Positions 1-58,100 of a stretch of 64,000 bases of DNA are shown in pieces; the first letter of the stretch is position 1; each line of letters opens with the position of its first letter. A program made the position numbers and the translations under genes. Under the pieces are notes generated by a model, which ran no database searches, was not told the DNA's origin, and saw nothing but the letters and a program-made list of their open reading frames with translations. The stretch spans positions 4,092,001 through 4,156,000 of the forward strand of contig OZ296648.1 of assembly GCA_965655095.1 (NCBI GenBank). Reading direction: 5' to 3'. This DNA comes from Haplodiscus bocki (taxonomy: Eukaryota).

Positions 1-344
1 CAGAAGAAGCTGTTCTTGCTCAAGCAAGAAGAAAAGAATACTTTCCAACTTCTGCTGGAGTTTTCTGGGTGCTCTGCTTGTTTTCGGGAGTTTTTTAAGG
101 AAAGATTACGGATGTATGTTTTTTTCTGACAGATTTGCGAGTTCTCAAAATTGATTTATGTTTCCCAAGTGTTGAGCGAGGCTAATGTTTGTTGCAAGAT
201 AACAGAAACATCTGTTTTAAGCAAAGTGACGTTTATACGATTGTGTGAGAACACTGATTTTTTTTCAGAGGGAAAAAGACTGGCAATTTTGACTATATTT
301 CACAAAATTTGAAACGGCTCGGCATGGCGGCTGACCTTTCAACA

Positions 345-3300
345 GAGCTCGAATTTGTAGAAACCCAAAAAGGTGTTTCCGAGACTATCATAAGTTCTGT
401 GAGTCTTGTGCTTTGTGGATGGGAGTTTTTGTAGAATTTGTCATGAAAAGATGTTTTTGCTGTTATACCGTCTCTGCAACTTTATATATTTCGAACTCAT
501 TTTTTTCATTGAGCCTCTTTTCTGTTAGAGAAAGTTTCAGAAAACAATTTTGATGAGCTTGAGTTGTACAAAAGACGATAGTAGGTTGTTTTAGTTTCCT
601 TCACCCAAAAAAAAAATAGAATGATTGGTACTTTTACCGTGGTATCTGATGGGCTGGAAAAAAATTATAGAACTCTCTAAGTTCACGAAAAGAGACGAAA
701 ATGGTATAGAAACGGTCCCTTGCAACTGTTGGTTTGATTTCCAAGACTTTTGAGGGTTTTCGAGTGACTTTTTGGTAACTTTAAGAGTTTTATTGTCAAT
801 GCAAACCTTGATCATTTTCAAAAAACTGGCTGTTTTCGGAAGTTTTCAGAGTTTTCCCTATCCGAAACTTTAAAATCATGTGACTCCAATCATCCGAAAC
901 CTTCAGTAGTTTCTGACCAAGACGAATTGAGGTAGTTCCAACCGTTGTGAGGTTTTCAATACTTTTCAAGGTCATTTCAATTTTATTTACCTTTGCCTAA
1001 ATAAGGGAAACTGCTCCGTTTACTTCTATGGTAAAGATCAAATTGGTATGGAATAATAGCTGACGAGATAGTTTGTGCTCTTGCAGTTAGAAAAGAGTAC
1101 TTCGGTCTTTTTGCTGGAGTGTTTTGGATGTTCTTCTGGTTTTGGCAATTTTTTGAAGGAAAGCTTGGAGAGGTATGTTTTTTTTCTGAATTTTGTGACA
1201 CCTTTGCTACTTTTCAAAATTGAAAAATCTCTTACATTTTTTACCAAAACGAGCTTCATTTTGGCTGCAGGAATAGAGGGAAAGCGGTTCAAACTCGGAG
1301 CAGTTTGCATACGCATGTTCAAGTAAACTCTACTTTCAGCGGCGCGAGAAATGGGATCTGCGACTTCCGAACTATATTTCGCAAACCACTAAACGGCTTG
1401 GCATAGCTGCTGACTTCTCAATAGAGCTCGAAAATGAGAAACACAGAAGAGCCGTTTCGAGTCTACGATAGCTCTTGCGAGTCTTGTGCTTCCTTGTAGG
1501 GAGTTTTCGGGAATTTGTCAAGAAAACCTTTTCCTGTTACATCATATCTGCAGACCTATATCTTTTCATCTCAGTATTTTTTAAGCTTCATTTTTGTCGG
1601 AGAATTTTTCAGGGAGCCATTTGGGAGAGCTTGGGGATTACGAAAGTCGATCTAAAAGTTTTATGTTACCTTCACTTAAGAAAAAATAATTTTTAGTAGT
1701 TTCACTTTGGTATCTGATGGGCTGAAAAAAGTTTTAGAAGTCTAACATTCCCAGAAATGAACAAATTGATAGAGAAACGGTCCTCTGCAACTGTTAGTTT
1801 GATTTTCAAGCGTTTAGAGGTTTTCCAGTGAGTTTTGGACTCTGTTCAAACTTTTATTTTGAATTCAAGCCTTGAGCTCATCTCAAAAAACTGGCTGTTT
1901 TTGAATTTTTGTAATGTTTTCTTTTTGGAAACTGTGAATACTGTGACTACGTTCTTGAACCGACTTCTCTATTGTCTGACCAAAACCAAACGATGCGCCT
2001 CCCACGCTTGTGGGATTTTCGGTGATTATCTTTATTGTTTTTACCATCGCCTGAACAAGGAAACGCTCTGTGTTTACATCCTTTGTTAAGTTCAAAACGG
2101 AGCGTGACAGCTGAGGATTCAGAAGAACATGTTCTTGCTCAAGCAATAAGAAAAGATTACTTTCCAGCCTCTGTTCGAGTTCTCCGGGTGCTCTGTTTTT
2201 TTAAGAGTTTTTTAAGGGAAGATTACGGATGTATGTTTTTTTCTGACAGATTTGCGAGTTCTCAAATTTGATTTATGTTTCCCAAGTGTTGAGCGAGCCT
2301 AATGTTTGTTGCAAGATAACAGAAACATCTGTTTCAAGCAAAGTGACGTTTATACGATTGTCCGAGAACACTGATTTTTTTTCAGAGGGAAAAAGACTGG
2401 CAATTTTGACTATATTTCACAAAATTTGAAACGGCTCGGCATGGCGGCTGACCTTTCAACAGAGCTCGAATTTGTAGAAACCCAAAAAGGTGTTTCCGAG
2501 ACTATCATAAGTTCTGTGAGTCTTGTGCTTTGTGGATGGGAGTTTTTGTAGAATTTGTCATGAAAAGATGTTTTTGCTGTTATACCGTCTCTGCAACTTT
2601 ATATATTTCGAACTCATTTTTTTCATTGAGCCTCTTTTCTGTTAGAGAAAGTTTCAGAAAACAATTTTGATGAGCTTGAGTTGTACAAAAGACGATAGTA
2701 GGTTGTTTTAGTTTCCTTCACCCAAAAAAAAAATAGAATGATTGGTACTTTTACCGTGGTATCTGATGGGCTGGAAAAAAATTATAGAACTCTCTAAGTT
2801 CACGAAAAGAGACGAAAATGGTATAGAAACGGTCCCTTGCAACTGTTGGTTTGATTTCCAAGACTTTTGGGGGTTTTCGAGTGACTTTTTGGTAACTTTA
2901 AGAGTTTTATTGTCAATGCAAACCTTGATCATTTTCAAAAAACTGGCTGTTTTCGGAAGTTTTCAGAGTTTTCCCTATCCGAAACTTTAAAATCATGTGA
3001 CTCCAATCATCCGAAACCTTCAGTAGTTTCTGACCAAGACGAATTGAGGTAGTTCCAACCGTTGTGAGGTTTTCAATACTTTTCAAGGTCATTTCAATTT
3101 TATTTACCTTTGCCTAAATAAGGGAAACTGCTGCGTTTACTTCTATGGTAAAGATCAAATTGGTATGGAATAATAGCTGACGAGATAGTTTGTGCTCTTG
3201 CAGTTAGAAAAGAGTACGTCGGTCTTTTTGCTGGAGTGTTTTGGATGTTCTTCTGGTTTTGGCAATTTTTTGAAGGAAAGCTTGGAGAGGTATGTTTTTT

Positions 3301-6300
3301 TCTGAATTTTGTGACACCTTTGCTTCTTTTCAAAATTGAAAAATCTCTTACATTTTTTACCAAAACGAGCTTCATTTTGGCTGCAGGAATAGAGGGAAAG
3401 CGGTTCAAACTCGGAGCAGTTTGCATACGCATGTTCAAGTAAACTCTACTTTCAGCGGCGCGAGAAATGGGATCTGCGACTTCCGAACTATATTTCGCAA
3501 ACCACTAAACGGCTTGGCATAGCTGCTGACTTCTCAATAGAGCTCGAAAATGAGAAACACAGAAGAGCCGTTTCGAGTCTACGATAGCTCTCGCGAGTCT
3601 TGTGCTTCCTTGTAGGGAGTTTTCGGGAATTTGTCAAGAAAACCTTTTCCTGTTACATCATATCTGCAGACCTATATCTTTTCATCTCAGTATTTTTTAA
3701 GCTTCATTTTTGTCGGAGAATTTTTCAGGGAGCCATTTGGGAGAGCTTGGGGATTACGAAAGTCGATCTAAAAGTTTTATGTTACCTTCACTTAAGAAAA
3801 AATAATTTTTAGTAGTTTCACTTTGGTATCTGATGGGCTGAAAAAAGTTTTAGAAGTCTAACATTCCCAGAAATGAACAAATTGATAGAGAAACGGTCCT
3901 CTGCAACTGTTAGTTTGATTTTCAAGCGTTTAGAGGTTTTCCAGTGAGTTTTGGACTCTGTTCAAACTTTTATTTTGAATTCAAACCTTGAGCTCATCTC
4001 AAAAAACTGGCTGTTTTTGAATTTTTGTAATGTTTTCTTTTTCGAAACTGTGAATACTGTGACTCCGTTCTTGAACCGACTTCTCTATTGTCTGACCAAA
4101 ACCAAACGATGCGCCTCCCACGCTTGTGGGATTTTCGGTGATTATCTTTATTGTTTTTACCATCGCCTGAACAAGGAAACGCTCTGTGTTTACATCCTTT
4201 GTTAAGTTCAAAACGGAGCGTGGCAGCTGATGACTCAGAAGAAGCTGTTCTTGCTCAAGCAAGAAGAAAAGAATACTTTCCAACTTCTGCTGGAGTTTTC
4301 TGGGTGCTCTGCTTGTTTTCGGGAGTTTTTTAAGGAAAGATTACGGATGTATGTTTTTTTCTGACAGATTTGCGAGTTCTCAAAATTGATTTATGTTTCC
4401 CAAGTGTTGAGCGAGGCTAATGTTTGTTGCAAGATAACAGAAACATCTGTTTTAAGCAAAGTGACGTTTATACGATTGTGTGAGAACACTGATTTTTTTT
4501 CAGAGGGAAAAAGACTGGCAATTTTGACTATATTTCACAAAATTTGAAACGGCTCGGCATGGCGGCTGACCTTTCAACAGAGCTCGAATTTGTAGAAACC
4601 CAAAAAGGTGTTTCCGAGACTATCATAAGTTCTGTGAGTCTTGTGCTTTGTGGATGGGAGTTTTTGTAGAATTTGTCATGAAAAGATGTTTTTGCTGTTA
4701 TACCGTCTCTGCAACTTTATATATTTCGAACTCATTTTTTTCATTGAGCCTCTTTTCTGTTAGAGAAAGTTTCAGAAAACAATTTTGATGAGCTTGAGTT
4801 GTACAAAAGACGATAGTAGGTTGTTTTAGTTTCCTTCACCCAAAAAAAAAATAGAATGATTGGTACTTTTACCGTGGTATCTGATGGGCTGGAAAAAAAT
4901 TATAGAACTCTCTAAGTTCACGAAAAGAGACGAAAATGGTATAGAAACGGTCCCTTGCAACTGTTGGTTTGATTTCCAAGACTTTTGAGGGTTTTCGAGT
5001 GACTTTTTGGTAACTTTAAGAGTTTTATTGTCAATGCAAACCTTGATCATTTTCAAAAAACTGGCTGTTTTCGGAAGTTTTCAGAGTTTTCCCTATCCGA
5101 AACTTTAAAATCATGTGACTCCAATCATCCGAAACCTTCAGTAGTTTCTGACCAAGACGAATTGAGGTAGTTCCAACCGTTGTGAGGTTTTCAATACTTT
5201 TCAAGGTCATTTCAATTTTATTTACCTTTGCCTAAATAAGGGAAACTGCTGCGTTTACTTCTATGGTAAAGATCAAATTGGTATGGAATAATAGCTGACG
5301 AGATAGTTTGTGCTCTTGCAGTTAGAAAAGAGTACGTCGGTCTTTTTGCTGGAGTGTTTTGGATGTTCTTCTGGTTTTGGCAATTTTTTGAAGGAAAGCT
5401 TGGAGAGGTATGTTTTTTTCTGAATTTTGTGACACCTTTGCTTCTTTTCAAAATTGAAAAATCTCTTACATTTTTTACCAAAACGAGCTTCATTTTGGCT
5501 GCAGGAATAGAGGGAAAGCGGTTCAAACTCGGAGCAGTTTGCATACGCATGTTCAAGTAAACTCTACTTTCAGCGGCGCGAGAAATGGGATCTGCGACTT
5601 CCGAACTATATTTCGCAAACCACTAAACGGCTTGGCATAGCTGCTGACTTCTCAATAGAGCTCGAAAATGAGAAACACAGAAGAGCCGTTTCGAGTCTAC
5701 GATAGCTCTCGCGAGTCTTGTGCTTCCTTGTAGGGAGTTTTCGGGAATTTGTCAAGAAAACCTTTTCCTGTTACATCATATCTGCAGACCTATATCTTTT
5801 CATCTCAGTATTTTTTAAGCTTCATTTTTGTCGGAGAATTTTTCAGGGAGCCATTTGGGAGAGCTTGGGGATTACGAAAGTCGATCTAAAAGTTTTATGT
5901 TACCTTCACTTAAGAAAAAATAATTTTTAGTAGTTTCACTTTGGTATCTGATGGGCTGAAAAAAGTTTTAGAAGTCTAACATTCCCAGAAATGAACAAAT
6001 TGATAGAGAAACGGTCCTCTGCAACTGTTAGTTTGATTTTCAAGCGTTTAGAGGTTTTCCAGTGAGTTTTGGACTCTGTTCAAACTTTTATTTTGAATTC
6101 AAACCTTGAGCTCATCTCAAAAAACTGGCTGTTTTTGAATTTTTGTAATGTTTTCTTTTTCGAAACTGTGAATACTGTGACTCCGTTCTTGAACCGACTT
6201 CTCTATTGTCTGACCAAAACCAAACGATGCGCCTCCCACGCTTGTGGGATTTTCGGTGATTATCTTTATTGTTTTTACCATCGCCTGAACAAGGAAACGC

Positions 6301-6697
6301 TCTGTGTTTACATCCTTTGTTAAGTTCAAAACGGAGCGTGGCAGCTGATGACTCAGAAGAAGCTGTTCTTGCTCAAGCAAGAAGAAAAGAATACTTTCCA
6401 ACTTCTGCTGGAGTTTTCTGGGTGCTCTGCTTGTTTTCGGGAGTTTTTTAAGGAAAGATTACGGATGTATGTTTTTTTCTGACAGATTTGCGAGTTCTCA
6501 AAATTGATTTATGTTTCCCAAGTGTTGAGCGAGGCTAATGTTTGTTGCAAGATAACAGAAACATCTGTTTTAAGCAAAGTGACGTTTATACGATTGTCCG
6601 AGAACACTGATTTTTTTTCAGAGGGAAAAAGACTGGCACTTTTGACTATATTTCACAAAATATGAAACGGCTCGGCATGGCGGCTGACCTTTCAACA
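345..6697. repeat. HOR domain 1: (A-B)x3 dimer, ~2117-bp period
   Basis: A at 345/2462/4580 and B at 1424/3540/5658; ORF offsets 591->2708->4826 (2117, 2118). Confidence 0.95.
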
Positions 6698-9600
6698 GAG
6701 CTCGAATTTGTAGAAACCCAAAAAGGTGTTTCCGAGACTATCATAAGTTCTGTGAGTCTTGTGCTTTGTGGATGGGAGTTTTTGTAGAATTTGTCATGAA
6801 AAGATGTTTTTGCTGTTATACCGTCTCTGCAACTTTATATATTTCGAACTCATTTTTTTCATTGAGCCTCTTTTCCAGGTTTTCCAGTGACTTCTGTGTT
6901 TTTTTGGAGAATTTTTGTGTCATTTAAAACCTTGAATTCATCTCAAAAAACTAGCTGTTTTCGGAAGTTTTCAGAGTTTTCCCTATCCGAACCTTTAAAA
7001 TCATCTTGTGACTACGATCATCCAAAGCCTTCACTAGTTTCTGACCATGACGAGTCGAGGCAGTTCCAACCGTTGTGAGGTTTTCAGTAGTTTTTAAGAT
7101 CCTTTCAATTTTCTCCACGTTTGCCTGAACAAAGAAAACTGCTCTGTTTACTTCTTTAGTAAAGATGAAATTGGTATGGAATAACACCTGACGAGATAAC
7201 GGAGCCTATTTGTGCTCTTGCAGTAAGAAAAGAGTACTTTCGCTTTTTTTGTTTGAGTGTTTTGGATTTTCTTTTGTTTTTGGCTATTTTTTGAAGGAAA
7301 GCTGGGAGAGGTATGTTTTTTTTCGGAATTTTGTGACAGCTTAGCTACTTTTCAAAATTGAGAAATCTCTTTCAACTTTTCAACGAGCTTCATCTTGCCT
7401 GCAGAAATAGAGGGACAGCGGTTGAAAATCAGAGCAAGTTGCCTGCGCAGGTTCAAGAAAAGTTTACTTTCAGCGGTGAGAGAAATGGAATTTGCGACTT
7501 CCCAACTATACTTCGCAAACCTGTAAACGGCTTGGCATAGCTGGTGGCCTCTCAACAGAGCTCGAAATTGTAGAAACTCAAAAAAGTGTTTTCGAGACTA
7601 TGATAAGTTCTGTGAGTCTTGTGCTTTTTGATGGGAGTTTTTGTAGAATTTGTCATGAAATTATGTTTTTCCTGTTATACCATCTCTGCAACTTTATATA
7701 TTTCGAACTGATTTTTTTCATTGAGGCTCTTTTCTGTTAGAGAAAGTTTCAGAAAGCAATTTTGATGAGCTTGAGTTGTACAAAAGACGATAGTAGGTTG
7801 TTTTAGTTTCCTTCACCCAAAAAAAAATAGAATGATTGGTACTTTTACCGTGGTATCTGATGGGCTGGAAAAAAATTATAGAACTCTCTAAGTTCACGAA
7901 AAGAGACGAAAATGGTATAGAAACGGTCCCTTGCAACTGTTGATTTGATTTCCAAGACTTTTGGGGGTTTTCGAGTGACTGTTTGGTAACTTTAAGAGTT
8001 TTATTGTCAATGCAAACCTTGATCATTTTCAAAAAACTGGCTGTTTTCGGAAGTTTTCAGAGTTTTCCCTATCCGAAACTTTAAAATCATGTGACTCCAA
8101 TCATCCGAAACCTTCAGTAGTTTCTGACCAAGACGAATTGAGGCAGTTCCAACCGTTGTGAGGTTTTCAATACTTTTCAAGGTCATTTCAATTTTATTTA
8201 CCTTTGCCTAAATAAGGGAAACTGCTCCGTTTACTTCTATGGTAAAGATCAAATTGGTATGGAATAATAGCTGACGAGATAGTTTGTGCTCTTGCAGTTA
8301 GAAAAGAGTACTTCGGTCTTTTTGCTGGAGTGTTTTGGATGTTCTTCTGGTTTTGGCAATTTTTTGAAGGAAAGCTTGGAGAGGTATGTTTTTTTTCTGA
8401 ATTTTGTGACACCTTTGCTACTTTTCAAAATTGAAAAATCTCTTACATTTTTTACCAAAACGAGCTTCATTTTGGCTGCAGGAATAGAGGGAAAGCGGTT
8501 CAAACTCGGAGCAGTTTGCATACGCATGTTCAAGTAAACTCTACTTTCAGCGGCGCGAGAAATGGGATCTGCGACTTCCGAACTATATTTCGCAAACCAC
8601 TAAACGGCTTGGCATAGCTGCTGACTTCTCAATAGAGCTCGAAAATGAGAAACACAGAAGAGCCGTTTCGAGTCTACGATAGCTCTTGCGAGTCTTGTGC
8701 TTCCTTGTAGGGAGTTTTCGGGAATTTGTCAAGAAAACCTTTTCCTGTTACATCATATCTGCAGACCTATATCTTTTCATCTCAGTATTTTTTAAGCTTC
8801 ATTTTTGTCGGAGAATTTTTCAGGGAGCCATTTGGGAGAGCTTGGGGATTACGAAAGTCGATCTAAAAGTTTTATGTTACCTTCACTTAAGAAAAAATAA
8901 TTTTTTAGTAGTTTCACTTTGGTATCTGATGGGCTGAAAAAAGTTTTAGAAGTCTAACATTCCCAGAAATGAACAAATTGATAGAGGAACGGTCCTTTGC
9001 AACTGTTAGTTTGATTTTCAAGCGTTTAGAGGTTTTCCAGTGAGTTTTGGACTCTGTTCAAACTTTTATTTTGAATTCAAACCTTGAGCTCATCTCAAAA
9101 AACTGGCTGTTTTTGAATTTTTGTAATGTTTTCTTTTTCGAAACTGTGAATACTGTGACTCCGTTCTTGAACCGACTTCTCTATTGTCTGACCAAAACCA
9201 AACGATGCGCCTCCCACGCTTGTGGGATTTTCGGTGATTATCTTTATTGTTTTTACCATCGCCTGAACAAGGAAACGCTCTGTGTTTACATCCTTTGTTA
9301 AGTTCAAAACGGAGCGTGACAGCTGAGGATTCAGAAGAACATGTTCTTGCTCAAGCAATAAGAAAAGATTACTTTCCAGCCTCTGCTCGAGTTCTCCGGG
9401 TGCTCTGCTTGTTTTTTAAAGAGTTTTTTAAGGGAAGATTACGGATGTATGTTTTTTTCTGACAGATTTGCGAGTTCTCAAAATTGATTTATGTTTCCCA
9501 AGTGTTGAGCGAGCCTAATGTTTGTTGCAAGATCACAGAAACATCTGTTTTAAGCAAAGTGACGTTTATACGATTGTCCGAGAACACTGATTTTTAGAGG

Positions 9601-18600: not shown

Positions 18601-19429
18601 GGATTACGAAAGTCGATCTAAAAGTTTTATGTTACCTTCACTTATGAAAAAATAATTTTTAGTAGTTTCACTTTGGTATCTGATGGGCTGAAAAAAGTTT
18701 TAGAAGTCTAACATTCCCAGAAATGAACAAATTGATAGAGAAACGGTCCTCTGCAACTGTTAGTTTGATTTTGAAGCGTTTAGAGGTTTTCCAGTGAGTT
18801 TTGGACTCTGTTCAAACTTTTATTTTGAATTCAAACCTTGAGCTCATCTCAAAAAACTGGCTGTTTTTGAATTTTTGTAATGTTTTCTTTTTCGAAACTG
18901 TGAATACTGTGACTCCGTTCTTGAACCAACTTCTCTATTGTCTGACCAAAACCAAACGATGCGCCTCCCACGCTTGTGGGATTTTTGGTGATTATCTTTA
19001 TTGTTTTTACCATCGCCTGAACAAGGTAACGCTCTGTGTTTACATCGTTTGTTAAGTTCAAAACGGAGCGTGACAACTGAGGATTCAGAAGAACATGGTC
19101 TTGCTCAAGCAATAAGAAAAGATTACTTTCCAGCCTCTGCTCGAGTTCTCCGGGTGCTCTGCTTGTTTTTTTAAGAGTTTGTTAAGGGAAGATTACGGAT
19201 GTATGTTTTTTTCTGACAGATTTGCGAGTTCTCAAAATTGATTTATGTTTCCCAAGTGTTGAGCGAGCCTAATGTTTGTTGCAAGATAACAGAAACATCT
19301 GTTTTAAGCAAAGTGACGTTTATACGATTGTCCGAGAACACTTATTTTTTCAGAGGGAAAAAGAATGGCAATTTTGACTATATTCCACAAAATATGAAAC
19401 GGCTCGGCATGGCGGCTGACCTTTCAACA
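6698..19429. repeat. HOR domain 2: mix of C-A-B (~2977 bp) and C-B (~1900 bp) units
   Basis: C monomers (859-860 bp) at 6698, 9674, 11577, 13476, 16454; spacings 2976, 1903, 1899, 2978, then 2976 to the next C at 19430. Confidence 0.93.
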
Positions 19430-45900: not shown

Positions 45901-48900
45901 TTGCGAGTTCTCAAAATTGATTTATGTTTCCCAAGTGTTGAGCGAGCCTAATGTTTGTTGCAAGATAACAGAAACATCTGTTTTAAGCAAAGTGACGTTT
46001 ATACGATTGTCCGAGAACACTGATTTTTTTTCAGAGGGAAAAAGACTGGCAATTTTGACTTTCTAACTATATTTCACAAAATATGAAACGGCTCGGCAAG
46101 GCGGCTGACCTTTCAACAGAGCTCGAATTTGTAGAAACCCAAAAAGGTGTTTCCGAGACTATCATAAGTTCTGTGAGTCTTGTGCTTTGTGGATGGGAGA
46201 TTTTGTAGAATTTGTCATGAAAAGATGTTTTTGCTGTTATACCGTCTCTGCAACTTTATATATTTCGAACTCATTTTTTTCGTTGAGCCTCTTTTCCAGG
46301 TTTTCCAGTGACTTCTGTGTTTTTTTGGAGAATTTTTGTGTCATTTAAAACCTTGAATTCATCTCAAAAAACTAGCTGTTTTCGGAAGTTTTCAGAGTTT
46401 TCCCTATCCGAACCTTTAAAATCATCTTGTGACTACGATCATCCAAAGCCTTCACTAGTTTCTGACCATGACGAGTCGAGGCAGTTCCAACCGTTTTGAG
46501 GTTTTCAGTAGTTTTTAGGATCCTTTCAATTTTCTCCACGTTTGCCTGAACAAAGAAAACTGCTCTGTTTACTTCTATAGTAAAGATGAAATTGGTATGG
46601 AATAACACCTGACGAGATAACGGAGCCTATTTGTGCTCTTGCAGTAAGAAAAGAGTACTTTCGCTTTTTTTGTTTGAGTGTTTTGGATTTTCTTTTGTTT
46701 TTGGCTATTTTTTGAAGGAAAGCTGGGAGAGGTATGTTTTTTTTCGGAATTTTGTGACAGCTTAGCTACTTTTTAAAATTGAGAAATCTCTTTAAACTTT
46801 TCAACGAGCTTCATCTTGCCTGCAGAAATAGAGGGACAGCGGTTCAAAATCAGAGCAAGTTGCCTGCGCAGGTGCAAGAAAAGTTTACTTTCAGCGGTGA
46901 GAGCAATGGAATTTGCGACTTCCCAACTATACTTCGCAAACCTGTAAACGGCTTGGCATAGCTGGTGGCCTCTCAACAGAGCTCGAATTTGGGAAACACA
47001 AAAGAGCTGTCTCGGGTGTATGACAGCTCTTGCGGGTCTTGTGCTTCCTTGTAGAGAGTTTTCGGGAAAACATGTTCTTCCTGTTACATCTCTGCAGACC
47101 TATATCTTTCCATCTCAGTATTTTATTATGCTTCATATTCGTCGCAGATGGTTTCAGTGAGCCTTTTGAATGACCTTGGGGATTACGAAAGACCATCAAA
47201 GAGTTTTAAGCTACCTTCACTTGAGAAAAAAATCCTTTTTGGTAGTTTAACTTTGGTATCTGATGGGCTGAAAAAAGTTGTAGAAGTCTTACATTCCCAG
47301 AAATGAACGAAATGGTAGAGAAACCGTCTTTTGCAACTGTTAGTTTGATTTGCAAAACATTCGGAGGTTTTCCGGTGACTTTTGGGTTCTTTTCAAAAGT
47401 TTTTTTTTTTCAAATCAAACCATGAGTTCATCTCAAAAAACTGGACATTTTTGATGTTTTGTATAGTTTTTTTTCGACACTATGAATACTGTGGGTACGT
47501 TTTTGAACAGACTTCTCTATTGTCCGAAGAAAACCGAACGATGCGCCTCCCACCGTTGTGGGGTTTTCAAGGATCATCTTTATTGTTTTTACCAACGCCT
47601 GAACAATGAAACGTGTTGTGTTTACATCCTTTGTTAAGTTCAAAAAGGAGCGTGGCAGCTGATGACTCAGAAGAAGCTGTTCTTGCTCAAGCAAGAAGAA
47701 AAGAATACTTTCCAACTTCTGCTGGAGTTTTCTGGGTGCTCTGCTTGTTTTCGGGAGTTTTTTAAGGAAAGATTACGGATGTATGTTTTTTTCTGAATTT
47801 TGTTCACATTTTTGCCAATTCTCAAAATTGAATAATCTTTCCCAAGTTCTCATGGAGCCTAATGTTTGTTGCAGGACAACAGAAACATCTGCTGTGGGCA
47901 AAGTGACGTATATACGATTGCCCGAGAACACTTATTTTTTCAGAGGGAAAAAGAATGGCAATTGTGTTTTTCTAACTATACTTCACAAAATATGAAACGG
48001 CTTGGCATGGTGGCTGACCTTTCAACAGAGCTCGAATTTGTAGAAACCCAAAAAGGTGTTTCCGAGACTATGATAAGTTCTGTGAGTCTTGTGCTTTGTG
48101 GATGGGAGTTTTTGTAGAATTTGTCATGAAAAGATGTTTTTGCTGTTATACCGTCTCTGCGACTTTATATATTTCGAACTCATTTTTTTCAGTGAGCCTC
48201 CTTTCCAGGTTTTCCAGTGACTTCTGTGTTTTTTGGAGAATTTTTGTGTCATTTAAAACCTTGAAGTCATCTCAAAAAACTAGCTGTTTTCGGAATTTTG
48301 AAGAGTTTTCTTTTCGAAACAGTTCATATTGTGACTCCGGTCATGAACAGGGTTAACTTTTGTGTGTCGGGCCGAGACGATGAGCCTCCCACTGTTTCGA
48401 GGTATTAGAGACTTTCCAAGATCGTGTGAATACTATTTACATTTGCCTGAGCAATGGAAACTGCTATTTGTACTTCTTTTTGGGCAACTTGAGAGGAATT
48501 AATTCTTTGTTGGCAGCTGAGCTCCCGACAAAGCATAGTTGTGCATAAACATGTTGGAAAGTTGACTTCGAGCTCCTGTTGAGTTTTGTGGTAATCTGGG
48601 TTCTTCTAAAACCCAAAAAGGTGTTTTCGCGACTATGATTAGTTTTGTGAGTCTTGTGCTCTTTCGATGTGAGTTTTTGTAGAATTTGTCATGAAAAGAT
48701 GTTTTTGCTGTTATACCGTCTCTGCAACTTTATATATTTCGAACTCATTTTTTTCATTGAGCCTCTTTTCCAGGTTTTCCAGTGACTTCTGTGTATTTTT
48801 GGAGAATTTTTGTGTCATTTAAAACCTTGAATTCATCTCAAAAAACTAGCTGTTTTCGGAATTTTGAAGAGTTTTCTTTTCGAAACAGTTCATATTGTGA

Positions 48901-51900
48901 CTCCGGTCATGAACAGGGTTAACTTTTGTGTGTCGGGCCGAGACGATGAGCCTCCCACTGTTTCGAGGTATTAGAGACTTTCCAAGATCGTGTGAATACT
49001 ATTTACATTTGCCTGAGCAATGGAAACTGCTATTTGTACTTCTTTTTGGGCAACTTGAGAGGAATTAATTCTTTGTTGGCAGCTGAGCTCCCGACAAAGC
49101 ATAGTTGTGCATAAACATGTTGGAAAGTTGACTTCGAGCTCCTGTTGAGTTTTGTGGTAATCTGGGTTCGTCTAAAACCCAAAAAGGTGTTTTCGCGACT
49201 ATGATTAGTTTTGTGAGTCTTGTGCTCTTTCGATGTGAGTTTTTGTAGAATTTGTCATGAAAAGATGTTTTTGCTGTTATACCGTCTCTGCAACTTTATA
49301 TATTTCGAACTCATTTTTTTCGTTGAGCCTCTTTTCCAGGTTTTCCAGTGACTTCTGTGTTTTTTTGGAGAATTTTTGTGTCATTTAAAACCTTGAATTC
49401 ATCTCAAAAAACTAGCTGTTTTCGGAAGTTTTCAGAGTTTTCCCTATCCGAACCTTTAAAATCATCTTGTGACTACGATCATCCAAAGCCTTCACTAGTT
49501 TCTGACCATGACGAGTCGAGGCAGTTCCAACCGTTTTGAGGTTTTCAGTAGTTTTTAGGATCCTTTCAATTTTCTCCACGTTTGCCTGAACAAAGAAAAC
49601 TGCTCTGTTTACTTCTATAGTAAAGATGAAATTGGTATGGAATAACACCTGACGAGATAACGGAGCCTATTTGTGCTCTTGCAGTAAGAAAAGAGTACTT
49701 TCGCTTTTTTTGTTTGAGTGTTTTGGATTTTCTTTTGTTTTTGGCTATTTTTTGAAGGAAAGCTGGGAGAGGTATGTTTTTTTTCGGAATTTTGTGACAG
49801 CTTAGCTACTTTTTAAAATTGAGAAATCTCTTTAAACTTTTCAACGAGCTTCATCTTGCCTGCAGAAATAGAGGGACAGCGGTTCAAAATCAGAGCAAGT
49901 TGCCTGCGCAGGTGCAAGAAAAGTTTACTTTCAGCGGTGAGAGCAATGGAATTTGCGACTTCCCAACTATACTTCGCAAACCTGTAAACGGCTTGGCATA
50001 GCTGGTGGCCTCTCAACAGAGCTCGAATTTGGGAAACACAAAAGAGCTGTCTCGGGTGTATGACAGCTCTTGCGGGTCTTGTGCTTCCTTGTAGAGAGTT
50101 TTCGAGAAAACATGTTCTTCCTGTTACATCTCTGCAGACCTATATCTTTCCATCTCAGTATTTTATTAAGCTTCATATTCGTCTCAGATGGTTTCAGTGA
50201 GCCTTTTGAATGACCTTGGGGATTACGAAAGACCATCAAAGAGTTTTAAGCTACCTTCACTTGAGAAAAAAATCCTTTTTGGTAGTTTAACTTTGGTATC
50301 TGATGGGCTGAAAAAAGTTGTAGAAGTCTTACATTCCCAGAAATGAACGAAATGGTAGAGAAACCGTCTTTTGCAACTGTTAGTTTGATTTGCAAAACAT
50401 TCGGAGGTTTTCCGGTGACTTTTGGGTTCTTTTCAAAAGTTTTTTTTTTCAAATCAAACCATGAGTTCATCTCAAAAAACTGGACATTTTTGATGTTTTG
50501 TATAGTTTTTTTTCGACACTATGAATACTGTGGGTACGTTTTTGAACAGACTTCTCTATTGTCCGAAGAAAACCGAACGATGCGCCTCCCACCGTTGTGG
50601 GGTTTTCAAGGATCATCTTTATTGTTTTTACCAACGCCTGAACAATGAAACGTGTTGTGTTTACATCCTTTGTTAAGTTCAAAAAGGAGCGTGGCAGCTG
50701 ATGACTCAGAAGAAGCTGTTCTTGCTCAAGCAAGAAGAAAAGAATACTTTCCAACTTCTGCTGGAGTTTTCTGGGTGCTCTGCTTGTTTTCGGGAGTTTT
50801 TTAAGGAAAGATTACGGATGTATGTTTTTTTCTGAATTTTGTTCACATTTTTGCCAATTCTCAAAATTGAATAATCTTTCCCAAGTTCTCATGGAGCCTA
50901 ATGTTTGTTGCAGGACAACAGAAACATCTGCTGTGGGCAAAGTGACGTATATACGATTGCCCGAGAACACTTATTTTTTCAGAGGGAAAAAGAATGGCAA
51001 TTGTGTTTTTCTAACTATACTTCACAAAATATGAAACGGCTTGGCATGGTGGCTGACCTTTCAACAGAGCTCGAATTTGTAGAAACCCAAAAAGGTGTTT
51101 CCGAGACTATGATAAGTTCTGTGAGTCTTGTGCTTTGTGGATGGGAGTTTTTGTAGAATTTGTCATGAAAAGATGTTTTTGCTGTTATACCGTCTCTGCG
51201 ACTTTATATATTTCGAACTCATTTTTTTCAGTGAGCCTCCTTTCCAGGTTTTCCAGTGACTTCTGTGTTTTTTGGAGAATTTTTGTGTCATTTAAAACCT
51301 TGAAGTCATCTCAAAAAACTAGCTGTTTTCGGAATTTTGAAGAGTTTTCTTTTCGAAACAGTTCATATTGTGACTCCGGTCATGAACAGGGTTAACTTTT
51401 GTGTGTCGGGCCGAGACGATGAGCCTCCCACTGTTTCGAGGTATTAGAGACTTTCCAAGATCGTGTGAATACTATTTACATTTGCCTGAGCAATGGAAAC
51501 TGCTATTTGTACTTCTTTTTGGGCAACTTGAGAGGAATTAATTCTTTGTTGGCAGCTGAGCTCCCGACAAAGCATAGTTGTGAATAAACATGTTGGAAAG
51601 TTGACTTCGAGCTCCTGTTGAGTTTTGTGGTAATCTGGGTTCTTCTAAAACCCAAAAAGGTGTTTTCGCGACTATGATTAGTTTTGTGAGTCTTGTGCTC
51701 TTTCGATGTGAGTTTTTGTAGAATTTGTCATGAAAAGATGTTTTTGCTGTTATACCGTCTCTGCAACTTTATATATTTCGAACTCATTTTCTTCATTGAG
51801 CCTCTTTTCCAGGTTTTCCAGTGACTTCTGTGTATTTTTGGAGAATTTTTGTGTCATTTAAAACCTTGAATTCATCTCAAAAAACTAGCTGTTTTCGGAA

Positions 51901-54140
51901 GTTTTCAGAGTTTTCCCTATCCGAACCTTTAAAATCATCTTGTGACTACGATCATCCAAAGCCTTCACTAGTTTCTGACCATGACGAGTCGAGGCAGTTC
52001 CAACCGTTGTGAGGTTTTCAGTAGTTTTTAAGATCCTTTCAATTTTCTCCACGTTTGCCTGAACAAAGAAAACTGCTCTGTTTACTTCTATAGTAAAGAT
52101 GAAATTGGTATGGAATAACACCTGACGAGATAACGGAGCCTATTTGTGCTCTTGCAGTAAGAAAAGAGTACTTTCGCTTTTTTTGTTTGAGTGTTTTGGA
52201 TTTTCTTTTGTTTTTGGCTATTTTTTGAAGGAAAGCTGGGAGAGGTATGTTTTTTTTCGGAATTTTGTGACAGCTTAGCTACTTTTTAAAATTGAGAAAT
52301 CTCTTTAAACTTTTCAACGAGCTTCATCTTGCCTGCAGAAATAGAGGGACAGCGGTTCAAAATCAGAGCAAGTTGCCTGCGCAGGTGCAAGAAAAGTTTA
52401 CTTTCAGCGGTGAGAGCAATGGAATTTGCGACTTCCCAACTATACTTCGCAAACCTGTAAACGGCTTGGCATAGCTGGTGGCCTCTCAACAGAGCTCGAA
52501 TTTGGGAAACACAAAAGAGCTGTCTCGGGTGTATGACAGCTCTTGCGGGTCTTGTGCTTCCTTGTAGAGAGTTTTCGAGAAAACATGTTCTTCCTGTTAC
52601 ATCTCTGCAGACCTATATCTTTCCATCTCAGTATTTTATTAAGCTTCATATTCGTCGCAGATGGTTTCAGTGAGCCTTTTGAATGACCTTGGGGAATACG
52701 AAAGACGATCAAAGAGTTTTAAGCTACCTTCACTTGAGAAAAAAATCCTTTTTGGTAGTTTTACTTTGGTATCTGATGGGCTGAAAAAAGTTGTAGAAGT
52801 CTTACATTCCCAGAAATGAACGAAATGGTAGAGAAACCGTCTTTTGCAACTGTTAGTTTGATTTGCAAAACATTCGGAGGTTTTCCGGTGACTTTTGGGT
52901 TCTTTTCAAAAGTTTTTTTTTCAAATCAAACCATGAGTTCATCTCAAAAAACTGGACATTTTTGATGTTTTGTATAGTTTTCTTTTTCGACACTATGAAT
53001 ACTGTGGGTACGTTCTTGAACAGACTTCTCTATTGTCCGAAGAAAACCGAACGATGCGCCTCCCACCGTTGTGGGGTTTTCAAGGATCATCTTTATTGTT
53101 TTTACCAACGCCTGAACAATGAAACGTGTTGTGTTTACATCCTTTGTTAAGTTCAAAAAGGAGCGTGGCAGCTGATGACTCAGAAGAAGCTGTTCTTGCT
53201 CAAGCAAGAAGAAAAGAATACTTTGCAACTTTTGCTGGAGTTTTCTGGGTGCTCTGCTTGTGTTCGGGAGTTTTTTAAGGAAAGATTACGGATGTATGTT
53301 TTTTTCTGAATTTTGTTCACATTTTTGCCAATTCTCAAAATTGAATAATCTTTCCCAAGTTCTCATGGAGCCTAATGATTGTTGCAGGACAACAGAAACA
53401 TCTGCTGTGGGCAAAGTGACGTATATACGATTGCCCGAGAACACTTATTTTTTCAGAGGGAAAAAGAATGGCAATTGTGTTTTTCTAACTATACTTCACA
53501 AAATATGAAACGGCTTGGCATGGTGGCTGACCTTTCAACAGAGCTCGAATTTGTAGAAACCCAAAAAGGTGTTTCCGAGACTATGATAAGTTCTGTGAGT
53601 CTTGTGCTTTGTGGATGGGAGTTTTTGTAGAATTTGTCATGAAAAGATGTTTTTGCTGTTATACCGTCTCTGCAACTTTATATATTTCGAACTCATTTTT
53701 TTCATTGAGCATCTTTTTCAGGTTTTCCAGTGACTTCTGTGTTTTTTGGAGAATTTTTGTGTCATTTAAAACCTTGAATTCATCTCAAAAAACTAGCTGT
53801 TTTCGGAATTTTGAAGAGTTTTCTTTTCGAAACAGTTCATATTGTGACTCCGGTCATGAACAGGGTTAACTTTTGTGTGTCGGGCCGAGACGATGAGCCT
53901 CCCACTGTTTCGAGGTATTAGAGACTTTCCAAGATCGTGTGAATACTATTTACATTTGCCTGAGCAATGGAAACTGCTATTTGTACTTCTTTTTGGGCAG
54001 CTTGAGAGGAATTAATTCTTTGTTGGCAGCTGAGCTCCCAACAAAGCATAGTTGTGCATAAACATGTTGGAAAGTTGACTTCGAGCTCCTGTTGAGTTTT
54101 GTGGTAATCTGGTTTCTTTTGTTGGGAGTTTTTCAATGAA
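36936..54140. repeat. HOR domain 4 (edge): C-D-E-F-B* units (~4.59 kb) then C-D-E units (~2.47 kb, one with tandem E-E); no class A
   Basis: C at 36936, 41521, 46119, 49159, 51632 (spacings 4585, 4598, 3040, 2473); E-E at 48028/48593; B* are D-head/B-body hybrids at 40493 and 45076. Confidence 0.9.
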
Positions 54141-54290
54141 GAAGAAGAATTTCCCTTGATAAGTCTCTTTGATATGGCTACACAAACTTTGAAACGTAGA
54201 TGCCTATATAAGGGATATCGACCTGGCAGAAATTTTCGAGTTACTCAAGAAGTTATTGAAGTTTCTTTTCAGGAGCAACCGATCGAAAAA

Positions 54291-54519
54291 ATGTCGGACC
54301 GCAACTAAATTTTTGTATGTGATGGAACAGAGTCTCAGCGTTAAGCCTGTTCTGAATTTAATTGATTTGGAGTCCTACATGCGAAAAATAACGATCTCTT
54401 TTTTGACAACTGTCACCAAGTTAGCCAAATTTAGCTCGATTCCATTTTTTATTTTGCAAAAAAACTATCAAGAATGTCGGACCCGAACCAAACTTTAGTA
54501 TGCGGCATATTAGAGTCTT
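54291..54519. repeat. Pair of imperfect ~45-bp direct repeats just outside the array, probably within a non-autonomous TE remnant
   Basis: ATGTCGGACCGCAACTAAATTTTTGTATG...AGAGTCT at 54291 vs ATGTCGGACCCGAACCAAACTTTAGTATG...AGAGTCT at 54474 (183 bp apart). Confidence 0.5.
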
Positions 54520-55496
54520 GTTTTAGCGTCTCGGCAAAAATTAAGATATATGTTAATTAGATAACGAGAAAGCTAGATTCTAACAAAAAATTTTGACTTG
54601 GAAGTGGAACGCAACAAGAATTGCTTCCGGTTTTTTTATTGTTGGTTAGTAAAAAGGCTTCGCCTAAAGATTGCAGTAATGTTTCGACCTTTACTTCGAG
54701 TTTTACTTTGTCAAAACGTTTCATCGTGATACCTCAGTGTCTAGTAGAAGTGAATTGATTTTTTCATGGCCGCTGCTTCAGGCGTGGAGCTTGTTTCTCG
54801 GGACTTGATTTGTTTCGGAAATTGAAAGTTGTTTCTTTGAGTTTGGACCTTTGTTTGCGCAAAATTGACCCTTGCGCGTTTTGTTAGTCGAAGCTTGTAA
54901 GGAAGCGCGACTATTGGTGTGTCTTTTCGTTTTTCTTCGAGCCTCTCGGTTTGACAGACTTAATGATTGGCCGCTAAGTAGCAACTGCTTTGCTAACAAG
55001 TAATAAACATATATACGTGTATATGCTGATTTTTTTTCGGTTCGAAAAGTTTCCTTTTCCCATTGTAAACCACTTTTAGTAGACCATTTTTTGAAAACCA
55101 GAACGTATGGAAAACTTAAACCTGGGCAATTAATTGCAAAAACGTCCGATCTCTCACCAATATTCTAAGGTTGGGGGACCGGGCCGATGTGGTCAGTTCC
55201 CGGCTTGCTCAAGTTGTGCTCAGATTCAGAGATCAAGTGTCGAGGAGAGAGAATATTTCTTGTTTACCCTCCCGGGTTGACTAATGGTCAACACGACGAT
55301 CATGCTATGACTTGGAATGATATTGGTGATTCATTCGCCGTGGCATTATCATATTCATCGTAGAATACAGAAACTCTTGAGGAGGCGTATATTAGAATTG
55401 ATCTATTCCCCTAAAAATTGGAATTTACCGAAATTAACGAAAAATTGTAATACGTATGCTACATTGAAACTTGTTGAGTAAAGACTGGCTGTATGG

Positions 55497-55915
55497 TAGG
55501 CATGTGCGGTTCATTGAATTGAGAATTGAAATTCAATTATTTCCCCTGGATTGAATTGAATTGACTAAATTGTTGAGAATTGAAAGTTTCAATTCAATTC
55601 ATTAACATTATTGTTGGCAACAAAATTGTCGTTAAGTATCACAAGTTTTTGTTTCCAGATTTGACTCAATTTAGACGACGTAAAATTAGTATTTGCCATC
55701 CAAAAACTAAAGATTTTGAATCAAAAAGTACCGCAGAAAACTACGGCCGGAATCGTAAAAGCAAATATATCCATAAAATAGTGATTTTCCAGGTGACTAT
55801 TTTGGAAATTTCAAGACGCCGTGCATTGAATTGATTTTGAATTGAATTGCAATTCATGCCCTCGAATTGGATTGGAATTGAATTGAATAAAACTTCCCTG
55901 GATCGTACATGCCTA
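55497..55915. mobile_element. Non-autonomous hAT-superfamily MITE (419 bp)
   Basis: TIRs TAGGCATGTGCGGTTCA / TGGATCGTACATGCCTA; perfect 8-bp TSD CTGTATGG at 55489-55496 and 55916-55923; clusters of subterminal GAATTG/CAATTC motifs at both ends. An 8-bp TSD with TAGG/CAGG-type termini is typical of hAT. Confidence 0.9.
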
Positions 55916-56061
55916 CTGTATGGTTATTACAGAAGAAAGCTCTAAGCCTCTCTGGAGTATTCTGCGTTCAATTTTGCTGACTTGGCAGTTTGGAGGCGAA
56001 ATTCTCTGTAAGGCAAGTCAAGTGTGAAAGAATTGGCAAGAAATTGAGTTGTTTTTCAAAA

Positions 56062-56463
56062 AAAAACATGGTGATCATACCATGAACATGGTTACACTTG
56101 CACAAGCAAGTGTTTTGTCACAGGCTTCCTTTTCTCTTTTCCGATCCGTTTAGAACTTGCTTTTGTGCCTAGCTTCTAATGATGCCTTGATTTTGTTCAT
56201 GCGTTCTCGCTTTCTCGCCAAAGTTCGTTCATTCTCTGTACTCAGTTGCAAAAATTTCTTCACTAGTCTTCCATTGGCGCAAGTATTGCGAAGCACAGCT
56301 TCGCCTCTGTGTACGAATAATAGAAAACGTGATCTTGCCTTGATTATGCCATGAATCATGGCGACCATGTCAGGAAACTTGGCCGCCATGCCGTCATCAT
56401 GGCGTGATCATGACCATGTTTCACCATGATCATAGCGTGGCAGCCATGTTTTTCCGACCCAGG
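56062..56463. mobile_element. CATG-rich element with imperfect inverted ends (probable non-autonomous DNA transposon, left end degraded)
   Basis: Left AAAAACATGGTGATCATACCATGAACATGG vs reverse complement of right end AAAAACATGGCTGCCACGCTATGATCATGG; dense CATG/TGATCA words at 56062-56092 and 56340-56452; no TSD recognised. Confidence 0.5.
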
Positions 56464-56513
56464 CTACGCGTAAGTGTGCTTGTAATGGTGATAGCTTTGC
56501 TCTTCATATTTAG

Positions 56514-56596
56514 GCACTTTCACGAAGGAGAAAGGCATTTGGATAGTGAAGCCAGTGGCCTCGTCTCGAGGAAGAGGAATATTCCTCATCAATCAT
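56514..56596 (+). CDS. TTLL5: Internal coding exon (83 bp) of a tubulin polyglutamylase, TTLL5-like (ATP-grasp TTL domain)
   Basis: Acceptor TCTTCATATTTAG|, donor |GTTAGT. After 2 nt of a split codon it reads [27 protein letters not shown], matching the TTLL WIVKP...SRGRG motif and, from memory, vertebrate TTLL5 [21 protein letters not shown]. Confidence 0.88.
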
Positions 56597-57011
56597 GTTA
56601 GTACCTTTACTCATAAACAAAAGGGTTTTCCCCCTCTTTCATTTGGAGCAATCTTTGCTGATTCAATTGCTATATTCCTGTTTTGCGAAAAAGTCGCCTT
56701 CAGATACAAAAATCATTCGTTTTTGCGTGCAACATGCTAACTGCATGGTAGATTACACGATTGTTTCTCACCCAAATTGAGGCGATATGAAATACTCGCT
56801 TCCTATTGGCTGATAGCGTTCAAAATGAATTTTTACGTGGGGCCTCAATGTCTCAAAGTTTAATGCAGTGATGGTGAACCGTGATTTTGCTGTCTAATTT
56901 TAGAGTAGTAAAACAGGGCTTGAACAATAGGTTTGTTGGACACTAAATACAGGGAGGAAGTTGTTATGCAATGAATTACCTAATTACTGTGTGTGTGTTT
57001 GTCGATTTCAG

Positions 57012-57081
57012 CCAAGCCAAGTGCCAATGGATGAGACTCTGATCGTGTCTCGCTACATCTCGAATCCTCTTCTCATTGACG
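57012..57081 (+). CDS. TTLL5: Next internal coding exon (70 bp) of the TTLL5-like gene
   Basis: Acceptor GATTTCAG|, donor G|GTCAGT. It joins the previous exon in phase 0 across a 415-bp GT-AG intron (56597-57011) and reads PSQVPMDETLIVSRYISNPLLID, matching the remembered TTLL5 [23 protein letters not shown]. No stops or frameshifts. Confidence 0.88.
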
Positions 57082-57338
57082 GTCAGTACTATCTAACTGC
57101 CTACTACTACTCTGGGCTTCTTGATAAATGCACGGAGAGGAGAGGTCATGCTTAGTGGAAGTGACTAAAAGATGCTTCCAAATCTTCAAAATTTGTATTG
57201 AAATCCTTTCATATCCGTTTTATTGTCAAGAGGAGGATCTTAACTCCCCCACCTTAAATGTGTTTGTTTTTTTTACACATCTGCAAAAGCTGATCATAAA
57301 TAATGCAGTCGGGCGAACAATATGCGGGTGCCAGCAGG

Positions 57339-58037: not shown

Positions 58038-58100
58038 CCAGCAGGCCGCCTTGTTTACCTTTTCATTCATTTTTAGTTCTGGCAAAATTTAGCATTGTGT

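What the first reader, a model, noticed from the sequence alone, without database searches (positions are those of the whole stretch)
1..57081. A >=54-kb higher-order satellite array appears to lie inside an intron of a TTLL5 (axonemal tubulin glutamylase) gene
Seen: two intact, in-phase internal TTLL5-like exons start 2.4 kb right of the array on the + strand, and the first begins mid-codon. The preceding coding sequence (in known TTLL5, ...[11 protein letters not shown]...F..LPQTF.LP.E) is not recognisable in 54140-56513, which is partly TE, nor anywhere in the array. Inference: the upstream exons lie left of this window, so the intron is >56 kb, almost pure satellite, and must be transcribed through. 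Known parallel: Drosophila Y-linked axonemal dynein genes kl-3/kl-5 have giant satellite-filled introns that need dedicated RNA-binding factors in spermatocytes; TTLL5 likewise serves cilia and sperm flagella. The next expected exon (FKFD.R.YV) was not found before 64000 either, so that intron is >6.9 kb.
Basis: partly seen in the sequence, partly recalled or inferred. Interest (0 to 1): 0.85.

Follow-up and report, generated by a model that had tools for sequence, protein, structure and literature searches.

The report
Giant satellite-filled intron in TTLL5
A 120-kb block of repeated DNA really does sit inside one intron of a conserved cilia and sperm-tail enzyme gene (TTLL5), stretching that intron to 125 kb where a relative has 61 bases, though no RNA data exist to show how the cell reads through it.

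Summary
The observation and the main inference both hold, and the inference is now shown on DNA.

- **Array.** Window 1-54112 is the right end of a single-orientation higher-order satellite. Monomers are about 1.07 kb and 71-81% alike between types. They are copied as 2- and 3-monomer units of 1.9-3.2 kb at 97-100% identity.
- **Second assembly.** The window also lies in a public ENA contig of 397 kb that is near-identical to it. I walked left along that contig. The array runs about 65.6 kb beyond the window start, about 119.7 kb in all.
- **Upstream exons.** About 3 kb left of the array, on the same strand, are the missing TTLL5 exons (HMM E 1e-52 and 4e-24). The last one ends ...CAAA|GTAAGA. 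Its A joins GC at 56514-56515 to give Ser, and the spliced frame stays open.
- **Intron size.** The intron is 125,119 bp, about 96% satellite.
- **Downstream exons.** Three more follow at about 68.4-69.3 kb.
- **Relative.** The same phase-1 intron is 61 nt. Over 169 codons there are 97 synonymous-only and 10 amino-acid changes, so the gene is under constraint.
- **Copy number.** The exons are single copy in reads.

Not shown: transcription through the array, since no RNA run exists. Other unchecked notes of this scan report similar introns in this genome, so the sperm and cilia parallel is probably coincidental. This is a new member of a known kind.

The parts
1..54112 (+). Right 54.1 kb of a higher-order satellite array of about 119.7 kb. 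Monomers are about 1.07 kb. Units are 1.9-2.98 kb in the window and 2.13 and 3.2 kb further left. The array continues about 65.6 kb left of window position 1.
   Evidence: k-mer repeat fraction. Repeat families and unit spacings. Extension and single orientation. 96 monomer matches of 700 nt or more, all on plus, 71-100% identity. Right end at 54112/54113 from read contigs.
54113..56513 (+). Last 2.4 kb of the giant intron. It is non-satellite: single-copy DNA interrupted by interspersed repeats. It ends in a pyrimidine tract and AG at 56512-56513.
   Evidence: Single-copy depth at 54083-55522 and 55969-56298. About 120x single-copy depth at 55352-55942 and about 400x at 56140-56403. No TTLL5 match. 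Sequence read.
55497..55915 (.). 419-bp MITE-like element with terminal inverted repeats (TAGGCATGT...) and an 8-bp target-site duplication CTGTATGG (55489-55496 and 55916-55923), as in the hAT superfamily.
   Evidence: Sequence read directly. Read contigs from other copies break at 55496/55497, and depth is about 120x single copy.
56514..56596 (+). TTLL5 exon A, 83 nt. GC completes a split Ser codon begun by the A that ends the upstream exon 125 kb away. 27 codons follow ([27 protein letters not shown]). The donor is GTTAGT.
   Evidence: Pfam TTL positions 63-89, E 9e-6. TTLL5 HMM E 1.5e-13. Open frame across the giant intron. Single copy in reads.
56597..57011 (+). 415-nt intron between exons A and B (GT...AG).
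   Evidence: Sequence. DNA contigs run colinear through it. Homologues' genomic ORFs read into an intron at the same place, after ...LINH.
57012..57081 (+). TTLL5 exon B, 70 nt (PSQVPMDETLIVSRYISNPLLI D|). The last G joins AC of exon C to give Asp.
   Evidence: Pfam TTL positions 91-114. HMM E 3.6e-8. Junction with exon C reads ...[13 protein letters not shown].
57082..64000 (+). First 6.9 kb of the 11,337-nt intron between exon B and exon C. Exon C lies at 68419-68503, beyond the window. The stretch holds interspersed repeats, a 26-bp minisatellite and a hAT-like ORF remnant.
   Evidence: No TTLL5 match in 57082-64000. Exons C-E found in L001 beyond the window end.

Best explanation
The window holds the right 54 kb of a co-oriented higher-order satellite of about 119.7 kb. 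That satellite makes up about 96% of a single 125,119-bp phase-1 intron of this animal's TTLL5 (tubulin polyglutamylase) gene.

Shown on DNA:
- The gene runs left to right on the + strand.
- Exons U2 and U1 lie about 69 kb left of the window start and encode the conserved N-terminal part of the TTL core, ending ...NHFPR|[10 protein letters not shown]...EYGDFQ.
- About 3 kb of unique DNA, the array and 2.4 kb of unique and transposon DNA follow.
- Exons A (56514-56596) and B (57012-57081) come next.
- After 11.3 kb come exons C, D and E.
- The reading frame stays open across every junction.

Inferred:
- To make the only mRNA that encodes a complete catalytic core, RNA polymerase II must transcribe the whole array on its T-rich sense strand, which would take tens of minutes. 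The spliceosome must then pair a donor and an acceptor 125 kb apart.
- The gene still works. It is single copy, all seven exons seen are intact, and it shows strong purifying selection against a relative.
- The intron grew from a very short ancestral intron (61 nt in the relative) by insertion and tandem amplification of a sequence of about 1 kb. The satellite has no role in the gene and is tolerated.
For: 1. The exact ORF window:59051-59299 is on ENA contig ctg88066 of 397,312 bp. That contig is 100% identical to window 49051-64000. It is colinear with the rest of the window apart from 1-2-bp shifts.
2. A TTLL5 HMM search of the left extension finds only two matches. One covers HMM 50-145 (E 1.1e-52) and one covers HMM 142-189 (E 4.2e-24). 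Both are on the + strand, directly left of the array. Exon A starts at HMM 187.
3. The donor is CAAA|GTAAGA, and A + GC gives Ser. U2+U1+A+B+C translate as one open frame of 220 aa. The intron measures 125,119 bp.
4. The array is continuous from about -65,574 to 54,112. It has no inverted k-mers, and all 96 monomer matches are on the plus strand.
5. Downstream exons C, D and E (HMM 235-332) lie on the same strand.
6. The exon region has depth 0.9-1.0x single copy in three runs. The right junction is present in contigs of four runs from two samples.
7. The relative's contig L013 has an intron at the same position and phase, 61 nt long. Over 169 codons, 62 are identical, 97 differ only synonymously and 10 change the amino acid.
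8. Full-length hits are named TTLL5 in Saccoglossus, Diadema and Potamilus. Every named hit to the N-terminal profile is also TTLL5.
Against: - There is no RNA evidence. No public run on record as RNA holds the exons, so transcription through the array and U1-A splicing are untested.
- Both assemblies probably derive from the same long reads, so they are not fully independent.
- A second sample (run X4) shows higher and uneven depth over the array, so its length may vary between individuals.
- The start codon and the 3' two-thirds of the gene were not fetched, so 'intact gene' covers only about 330 codons.
Confidence: 0.88

Rival explanations
1. Assembly artefact. The array is real but is misplaced, or much over- or under-sized, between the TTLL5 exons. 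The true intron would then be short or of a quite different length.
For: Long tandem arrays are the commonest sites of mis-joins. The two assemblies that agree may share their reads. They differ by a few 1-bp indels and by mismatches at 39-47 kb. Only the right junction was checked in reads.
Against: Contigs from four runs of two samples carry the join of 30 nt of repeat to the unique flank at 54083-54113, at single-copy depth. For sample S1, depth ratios of the array's last 2 kb (6-8x and 17-24x) match the copy numbers in the window (6-8 and 13-17), so there is no gross collapse. Two assemblers gave the same order over about 139 kb with no conflict between overlapping loci. Both flanks carry exons of the same gene in the right order, strand and phase, which a random mis-join would not give.
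Confidence: 0.06
2. The array has functionally split or silenced the gene. Either the upstream and downstream exons are no longer joined in a mature mRNA (a young pseudogene), or the downstream part is expressed from a promoter right of the array.
For: There are no RNA data. Transcribing and splicing across 120 kb of satellite is demanding, and in Drosophila it needs dedicated factors (PMC6508621, PMC8248703). The 2.4 kb left of exon A carries transposon fragments that could supply promoters.
Against: All seven exons seen are intact, with consensus-like splice sites and exact phase continuity. There are 97 synonymous against 10 replacement codon changes relative to the other species. The exons are single copy, so no other TTLL5 copy could take over. 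Monomer types are 20-29% diverged, so the array is not brand new, yet the exons show no decay. A protein that started at exon A would lack about 190 conserved residues of the TTL core.
Confidence: 0.08
3. Orphan fragment. The two exons in the window are a duplicated or transposon-captured piece of TTLL5 with no partner exons.
For: Within the window alone no other TTLL5 exon exists.
Against: Upstream exons and downstream exons lie on the same strand in HMM order 50-145, 142-189, 187-218, 216-241, 235-268, 266-302 and 302-332. Exon depth is single copy.
Confidence: 0.01

Closest known systems
Drosophila Y-linked fertility genes kl-2, kl-3 and kl-5 with satellite-filled gigantic introns (Fingerhut et al. 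2019, PMC6508621; also PMC8248703, PMC11207136, PMC12965833)
   Same: A conserved gene of the axoneme and cilium has an intron made almost wholly of tandem satellite DNA that lies between coding exons. Polymerase would have to read through the satellite. The intron is about a thousand times longer than its counterpart in a relative.
   Different: This intron is 125 kb, not megabases. The satellite is a complex 1.07-kb monomer in higher-order units, not simple 5-10-bp repeats. Y linkage or heterochromatin, spermatocyte-specific expression and dedicated RNA-binding factors could not be tested. Other scan notes (unchecked) list similar introns in unrelated genes of this genome.
Alpha-satellite-type higher-order repeat arrays
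   Same: Diverged monomers (71-81% identity) are copied as multi-monomer units that are 97-100% identical. The array is head to tail in a single orientation, with domains of different unit length.
   Different: The monomer is about 1.07 kb rather than about 171 bp. The array is euchromatic and intragenic, with unique DNA and exons 2-3 kb from both ends. Nothing suggests a centromere.
TTLL5 (tubulin tyrosine ligase-like 5, an initiating polyglutamylase of alpha-tubulin and of RPGR; PMC13052805, PMC5701211)
   Same: The 220 spliced residues align without gaps to proteins named TTLL5, with 66-80% identity over the 51 residues of exons A and B. The family's ELTRKDRL and WIVKPxASSRGRG motifs are present.
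   Different: Only about 330 codons of an expected 1,200-1,500 were seen. The C-terminal cofactor and microtubule-binding regions were not fetched.

Membership tests
TTLL5 orthologue | TTL (ATP-grasp) domain, Pfam PF03133 | tested here: met
   Exons A and B hit PF03133 positions 63-89 and 91-114, at 25.5 and 19 bits.
TTLL5 orthologue | Closest full-length relatives are TTLL5 rather than another TTLL paralogue | tested here: met
   The full-length hits whose names were looked up (Saccoglossus, Diadema, Potamilus) are named TTLL5. The named hits to the N-terminal profile are TTLL5. The nearest solved non-TTLL5 chains (the top one unnamed, the next TTLL6) score only 13-19 bits. No explicit paralogue tree was built.
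TTLL5 orthologue | Complete gene, including the start codon and the C-terminal regions specific to TTLL5 | not tested
   Only HMM positions 50-332 were fetched.
Higher-order-repeat satellite | Head-to-tail monomers, with multi-monomer units far more alike than neighbouring monomers | tested here: met
   Monomer types are 71-81% alike, while units 2.1-3.2 kb apart are 97-100% alike. Single orientation.
Gigantic satellite-intron genes (Drosophila kl-3/kl-5 type) | Intron bounded by coding exons of one gene and composed mainly of satellite DNA | tested here: met
   125,119-bp intron, about 119.7 kb of it array.
Gigantic satellite-intron genes (Drosophila kl-3/kl-5 type) | Megabase scale and simple-sequence satellites | tested here: not met
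   0.125 Mb, with a complex 1.07-kb monomer.
Gigantic satellite-intron genes (Drosophila kl-3/kl-5 type) | Satellite transcribed as part of the pre-mRNA, with dedicated RNA-binding factors | not testable with these tools
   No RNA run holds the locus.

The most novel reading that the evidence does not exclude
This may be a working example, outside Drosophila and perhaps not on a sex chromosome, of a gene expressed through a satellite intron of over 100 kb. It may also be one of many in this genome, which would imply a general tolerance or machinery for transcribing and splicing across satellites. The array has almost no sense-strand AATAAA (2, against 182 on the antisense strand). That would then reflect selection for read-through rather than chance in the founding monomer.
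Probability: 0.15. Interest if true: 0.75.

Novelty: new member of a known kind. Interest (0 to 1): 0.5.

Why it matters
This is a verified case, with both bounding exons in hand, of a conserved single-copy housekeeping gene of cilia whose intron was inflated about 2,000-fold (61 nt to 125 kb) by one satellite, while the coding sequence stayed under strong constraint. Satellite-filled giant introns have been studied almost only on the Drosophila Y chromosome. An animal in which such introns may be common, as several unchecked notes of this scan suggest, would let three questions be tested. One is whether read-through of satellites needs special factors. Another is whether array length varies between individuals and affects expression. 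The third is how such introns arise. It also warns annotators that exons 125 kb apart across 'heterochromatin-like' DNA can belong to one gene.

Tried and rejected
- Tandem Repeats Finder found nothing in the array, because the period exceeds its 500-bp limit.
- Rfam and tRNA scans of the window were empty, so the array is not an RNA-gene array.
- Pfam on the longest ORFs gave only low-complexity noise.
- Two searches for RNA runs found only four DNA runs. The read contigs are colinear through the A-B intron, so they are DNA.
- The scan's own notes hold no TTLL entry for this genome. Places left of the window cannot be asked for.
- Ten guessed ORFs were tested for exact presence in the protein collection, and only one was on record. 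A guessed 74-aa ORF was not on record.
- The contig's gene calls turned out to use code 4 (TGA = Trp) and are spurious ORFs. Only TGA-free calls or stored protein ids could be used to walk along the contig.
- An N-terminal TTLL5 profile search for called ORFs over the upstream exons found none on this contig. It did find the relative's ORF, P0169.
- A 109-aa piece of an array ORF missed its 192-aa relatives through the length window. Searching with stored protein P0260 solved this.
- A PDB search with exon U2 found nothing.
The copies are not independent, and ATTAAA is depleted on both strands.
- The 18-nt gap between loci L006 and L007 was left as N.
Full report
**Coordinates.** Positive numbers are window positions. 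Negative numbers are positions left of window base 1. They are derived from ENA contig ctg88066_71.65x_l (assembly ERZ26859043, 397,312 bp), where the contig position is about 263,380 minus the window position, within 2 bp.

**1. The observation**

- The first 54 kb of the window is a tandem array. 91-100% of its 14-mers recur in every 2-kb bin, against 0-5% right of 54 kb.
- Tandem Repeats Finder sees nothing because the period exceeds 500 bp.
- Repeat families and a BLAST of one 2,976-bp unit show that all copies are on the + strand. Units of 1.9, 2.12, 2.47, 2.7 and 2.98 kb are 97-100% alike.
- Those units rest on a base period of about 1.08 kb whose monomer types are only about 80% alike. 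That is a higher-order repeat.
- The array holds no Rfam family, no tRNA, no ORF over 151 aa and no Pfam domain.
- To the right lie two exons. Exon A is 56514-56596 and starts with two bases of a split codon. Exon B is 57012-57081. Both have AG/GT borders.
- The exons match consecutive positions of Pfam TTL. They also match an HMM that I built from 12 full-length TTLL5 proteins, with E 1.5e-13 and 3.6e-8.
- No other part of the window matches that HMM on either strand.

**2. Is it TTLL5?**

- An exhaustive HMMER search with exon A found 138 proteins. The full-length hits are 1,000-1,500 aa and carry the match near residue 200.
- The ones whose names I looked up are called TTLL5 in Saccoglossus, Diadema and Potamilus.
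- The spliced 51 residues align without gaps at 66-80% identity. The best matches are an Actinostola protein (80%) and Saccoglossus TTLL5 (79%).
- Many genomic ORF fragments from other species read into an intron directly after ...LINH and out of one directly before [S/A/T]F.K.KG. Both exon borders are therefore old intron positions.

**3. Reads**

- Only four runs hold the locus, from one study and two samples. None is on record as RNA.
- Laid on 52200-58100, their contigs run colinear through the A-B intron, so they are DNA.
- The exon region and the unique flank have single-copy depth (ratio 0.9-1.1).
- A contig at about 7x depth (53779-54112) overlaps by 30 nt a single-copy contig that starts at 54083. 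The repeat-to-flank join at 54112/54113 is therefore present in all four runs.
- In sample S1, depth ratios over the array's last 2 kb (6-8x and 17-24x) match the 31-mer copy numbers in the window (6-8 and 13-17). That argues against gross collapse.
- Sample S2 gives higher and uneven ratios, so copy number may vary between individuals.

**4. Getting outside the window**

- One of ten guessed ORFs, window 59051-59299, is on record on ENA contig ctg88066.
- The fetched locus is 100% identical to window 49051-64000 and runs 5.3 kb further right. The rest of the window is colinear with the contig apart from 1-2-bp shifts.
- The contig's gene calls are spurious ORFs called with TGA read as Trp. 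I walked left in three ways:
  - with TGA-free ORFs;
  - with stored protein ids of array ORFs found by homology to P0260;
  - by look-up of those ids that are not encoded in the DNA already held.
- Overlapping loci never conflicted.

**5. Result**

- To the right, exon C lies at 68419-68503 ([28 protein letters not shown]). Exons D and E follow at about 68.97-69.28 kb on the same strand, covering HMM 235-332. The B-C intron is 11,337 nt.
- To the left, the array continues without a break and in one orientation to about -65,574. Units there are 2.13 kb and 3.2 kb. The whole array is about 119.7 kb, or about 110 monomers.
- About 3 kb further left, on the + strand, lie exon U2 (-69125 to -68832, HMM 50-145, E 1.1e-52) and exon U1 (-68736 to -68606, HMM 142-189, E 4.2e-24).
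- U1 encodes [43 protein letters not shown] and ends CAAA|GTAAGA. Its last A joins GC at 56514-56515 to give AGC (Ser). Homologues carry Ser, Thr or Ala at that position.
- U2+U1+A+B+C translate as one open frame of 220 residues.
- The U1-A intron is 125,119 bp. It consists of 3.0 kb of unique DNA, about 119.7 kb of satellite, and 2.4 kb of unique and transposon DNA.

**6. Comparison with a relative**

- The N-terminal profile search turned up P0169, an ORF 95% identical to exon U2, on contig ctg34836 (153,847 bp) of a different ENA assembly.
- There the same gene is compact. Exons U2 to E span 7.4 kb, against 138 kb here.
- Its U1-A intron has the same position and phase (CAAA|GTAAAT ... ttag|GT) and is 61 nt long.
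- That locus has no similarity to the satellite.
- Over 169 aligned codons, 62 are identical, 97 differ only synonymously and 10 change the amino acid. Nucleotide identity is 76% and amino-acid identity is 94%. The gene has been under strong purifying selection.
- The array's monomer types are 20-29% diverged, so the array is unlikely to be very young. Even so, none of the seven exons shows damage.

**7. Interpretation**

- Shown: the array lies within one intron of a single-copy, conserved, apparently intact TTLL5 gene.
- Inferred: the pre-mRNA must include about 120 kb of satellite on its T-rich sense strand (A 27%, T 35%), and the array is a tolerated passenger.
- The sense strand has 2 AATAAA against 182 on the antisense strand. 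This fits read-through, but it is not evidence for it. The copies descend from one monomer, and ATTAAA is rare on both strands.
- The parallel with Drosophila kl-3/kl-5 (PMC6508621) holds for architecture only. Scale, repeat type and chromosomal setting differ or are unknown.
- Other first-stage notes of this scan, all unchecked, report candidate satellite-filled introns in NFXL1-like, MSL3-like and dynein genes of the same genome. The phenomenon therefore looks genome-wide rather than tied to sperm or cilia genes.

**8. Verdict**

The array is larger than claimed: about 120 kb in an intron of 125 kb. This is a new member of a known kind, of moderate interest. The missing piece is RNA.

Noticed in passing
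window 55497-55915: A 419-bp MITE-like element with terminal inverted repeats and an 8-bp target-site duplication CTGTATGG (hAT-like). Read depth suggests about 120 copies in the genome.
   Followed up: partly
window 56140-56403 and 57339-58037: Two interspersed repeats. The first has about 400x single-copy depth and ends about 110 bp before exon A's acceptor. The second has contig break points at both ends (57339 and 58037).
   Followed up: no
window 59051-59299 (+): An 83-aa ORF with a weak hAT dimerisation-domain hit (PF05699), probably a transposase remnant inside the B-C intron. It served as the handle that found the ENA contig.
   Followed up: partly
window 59501-59651 and about 61900-61980: A 26-bp minisatellite of 5.8 copies (92% matches) and a run of a two-base repeat that translates as SLSLSL or ERERER.
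   Followed up: no
array, about -65,574 to 54,112: Strong strand asymmetry of the poly(A) signal hexamer AATAAA: 2 on the sense strand against 182 on the antisense strand. ATTAAA is rare on both strands (4 and 3). This may be chance in the founding monomer, because the copies are not independent.
   Followed up: partly
L009 (ENA ctg32756_26.91x, 9,381 bp) 558-6822: A second contig carries the same satellite family at only 89-90% identity to the left domain of the array. It is either a small array at another locus or a divergent haplotype.
   Followed up: partly
window 52200-54112, run X4 (sample S2): Depth over array variants relative to the flank is about 10-30x in sample S2, against 6-8x in sample S1. 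Array copy number may differ between individuals, but flank depth in X4 is uneven (26-83).
   Followed up: no
ENA contig ctg88066, all loci L001-L012: The public gene calls on this eukaryotic contig were made with genetic code 4 (TGA read as Trp). They are spurious ORFs, and none covers a TTLL5 exon in frame.
   Followed up: yes
array edges: -65,574 and 54,112: The array starts at about position 322 of the reference monomer. The last monomer match ends at position 922 (53991), about 120 nt before the repeat stops, so the two ends are not in the same register. No monomer-like sequence occurs in the unique flanks. The origin of the founding sequence is unresolved.
   Followed up: partly
L013 1-1104 (-): In the relative's contig, a reverse-transcriptase ORF (PF00078) lies about 9 kb upstream of TTLL5 exon U2.
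   Followed up: no
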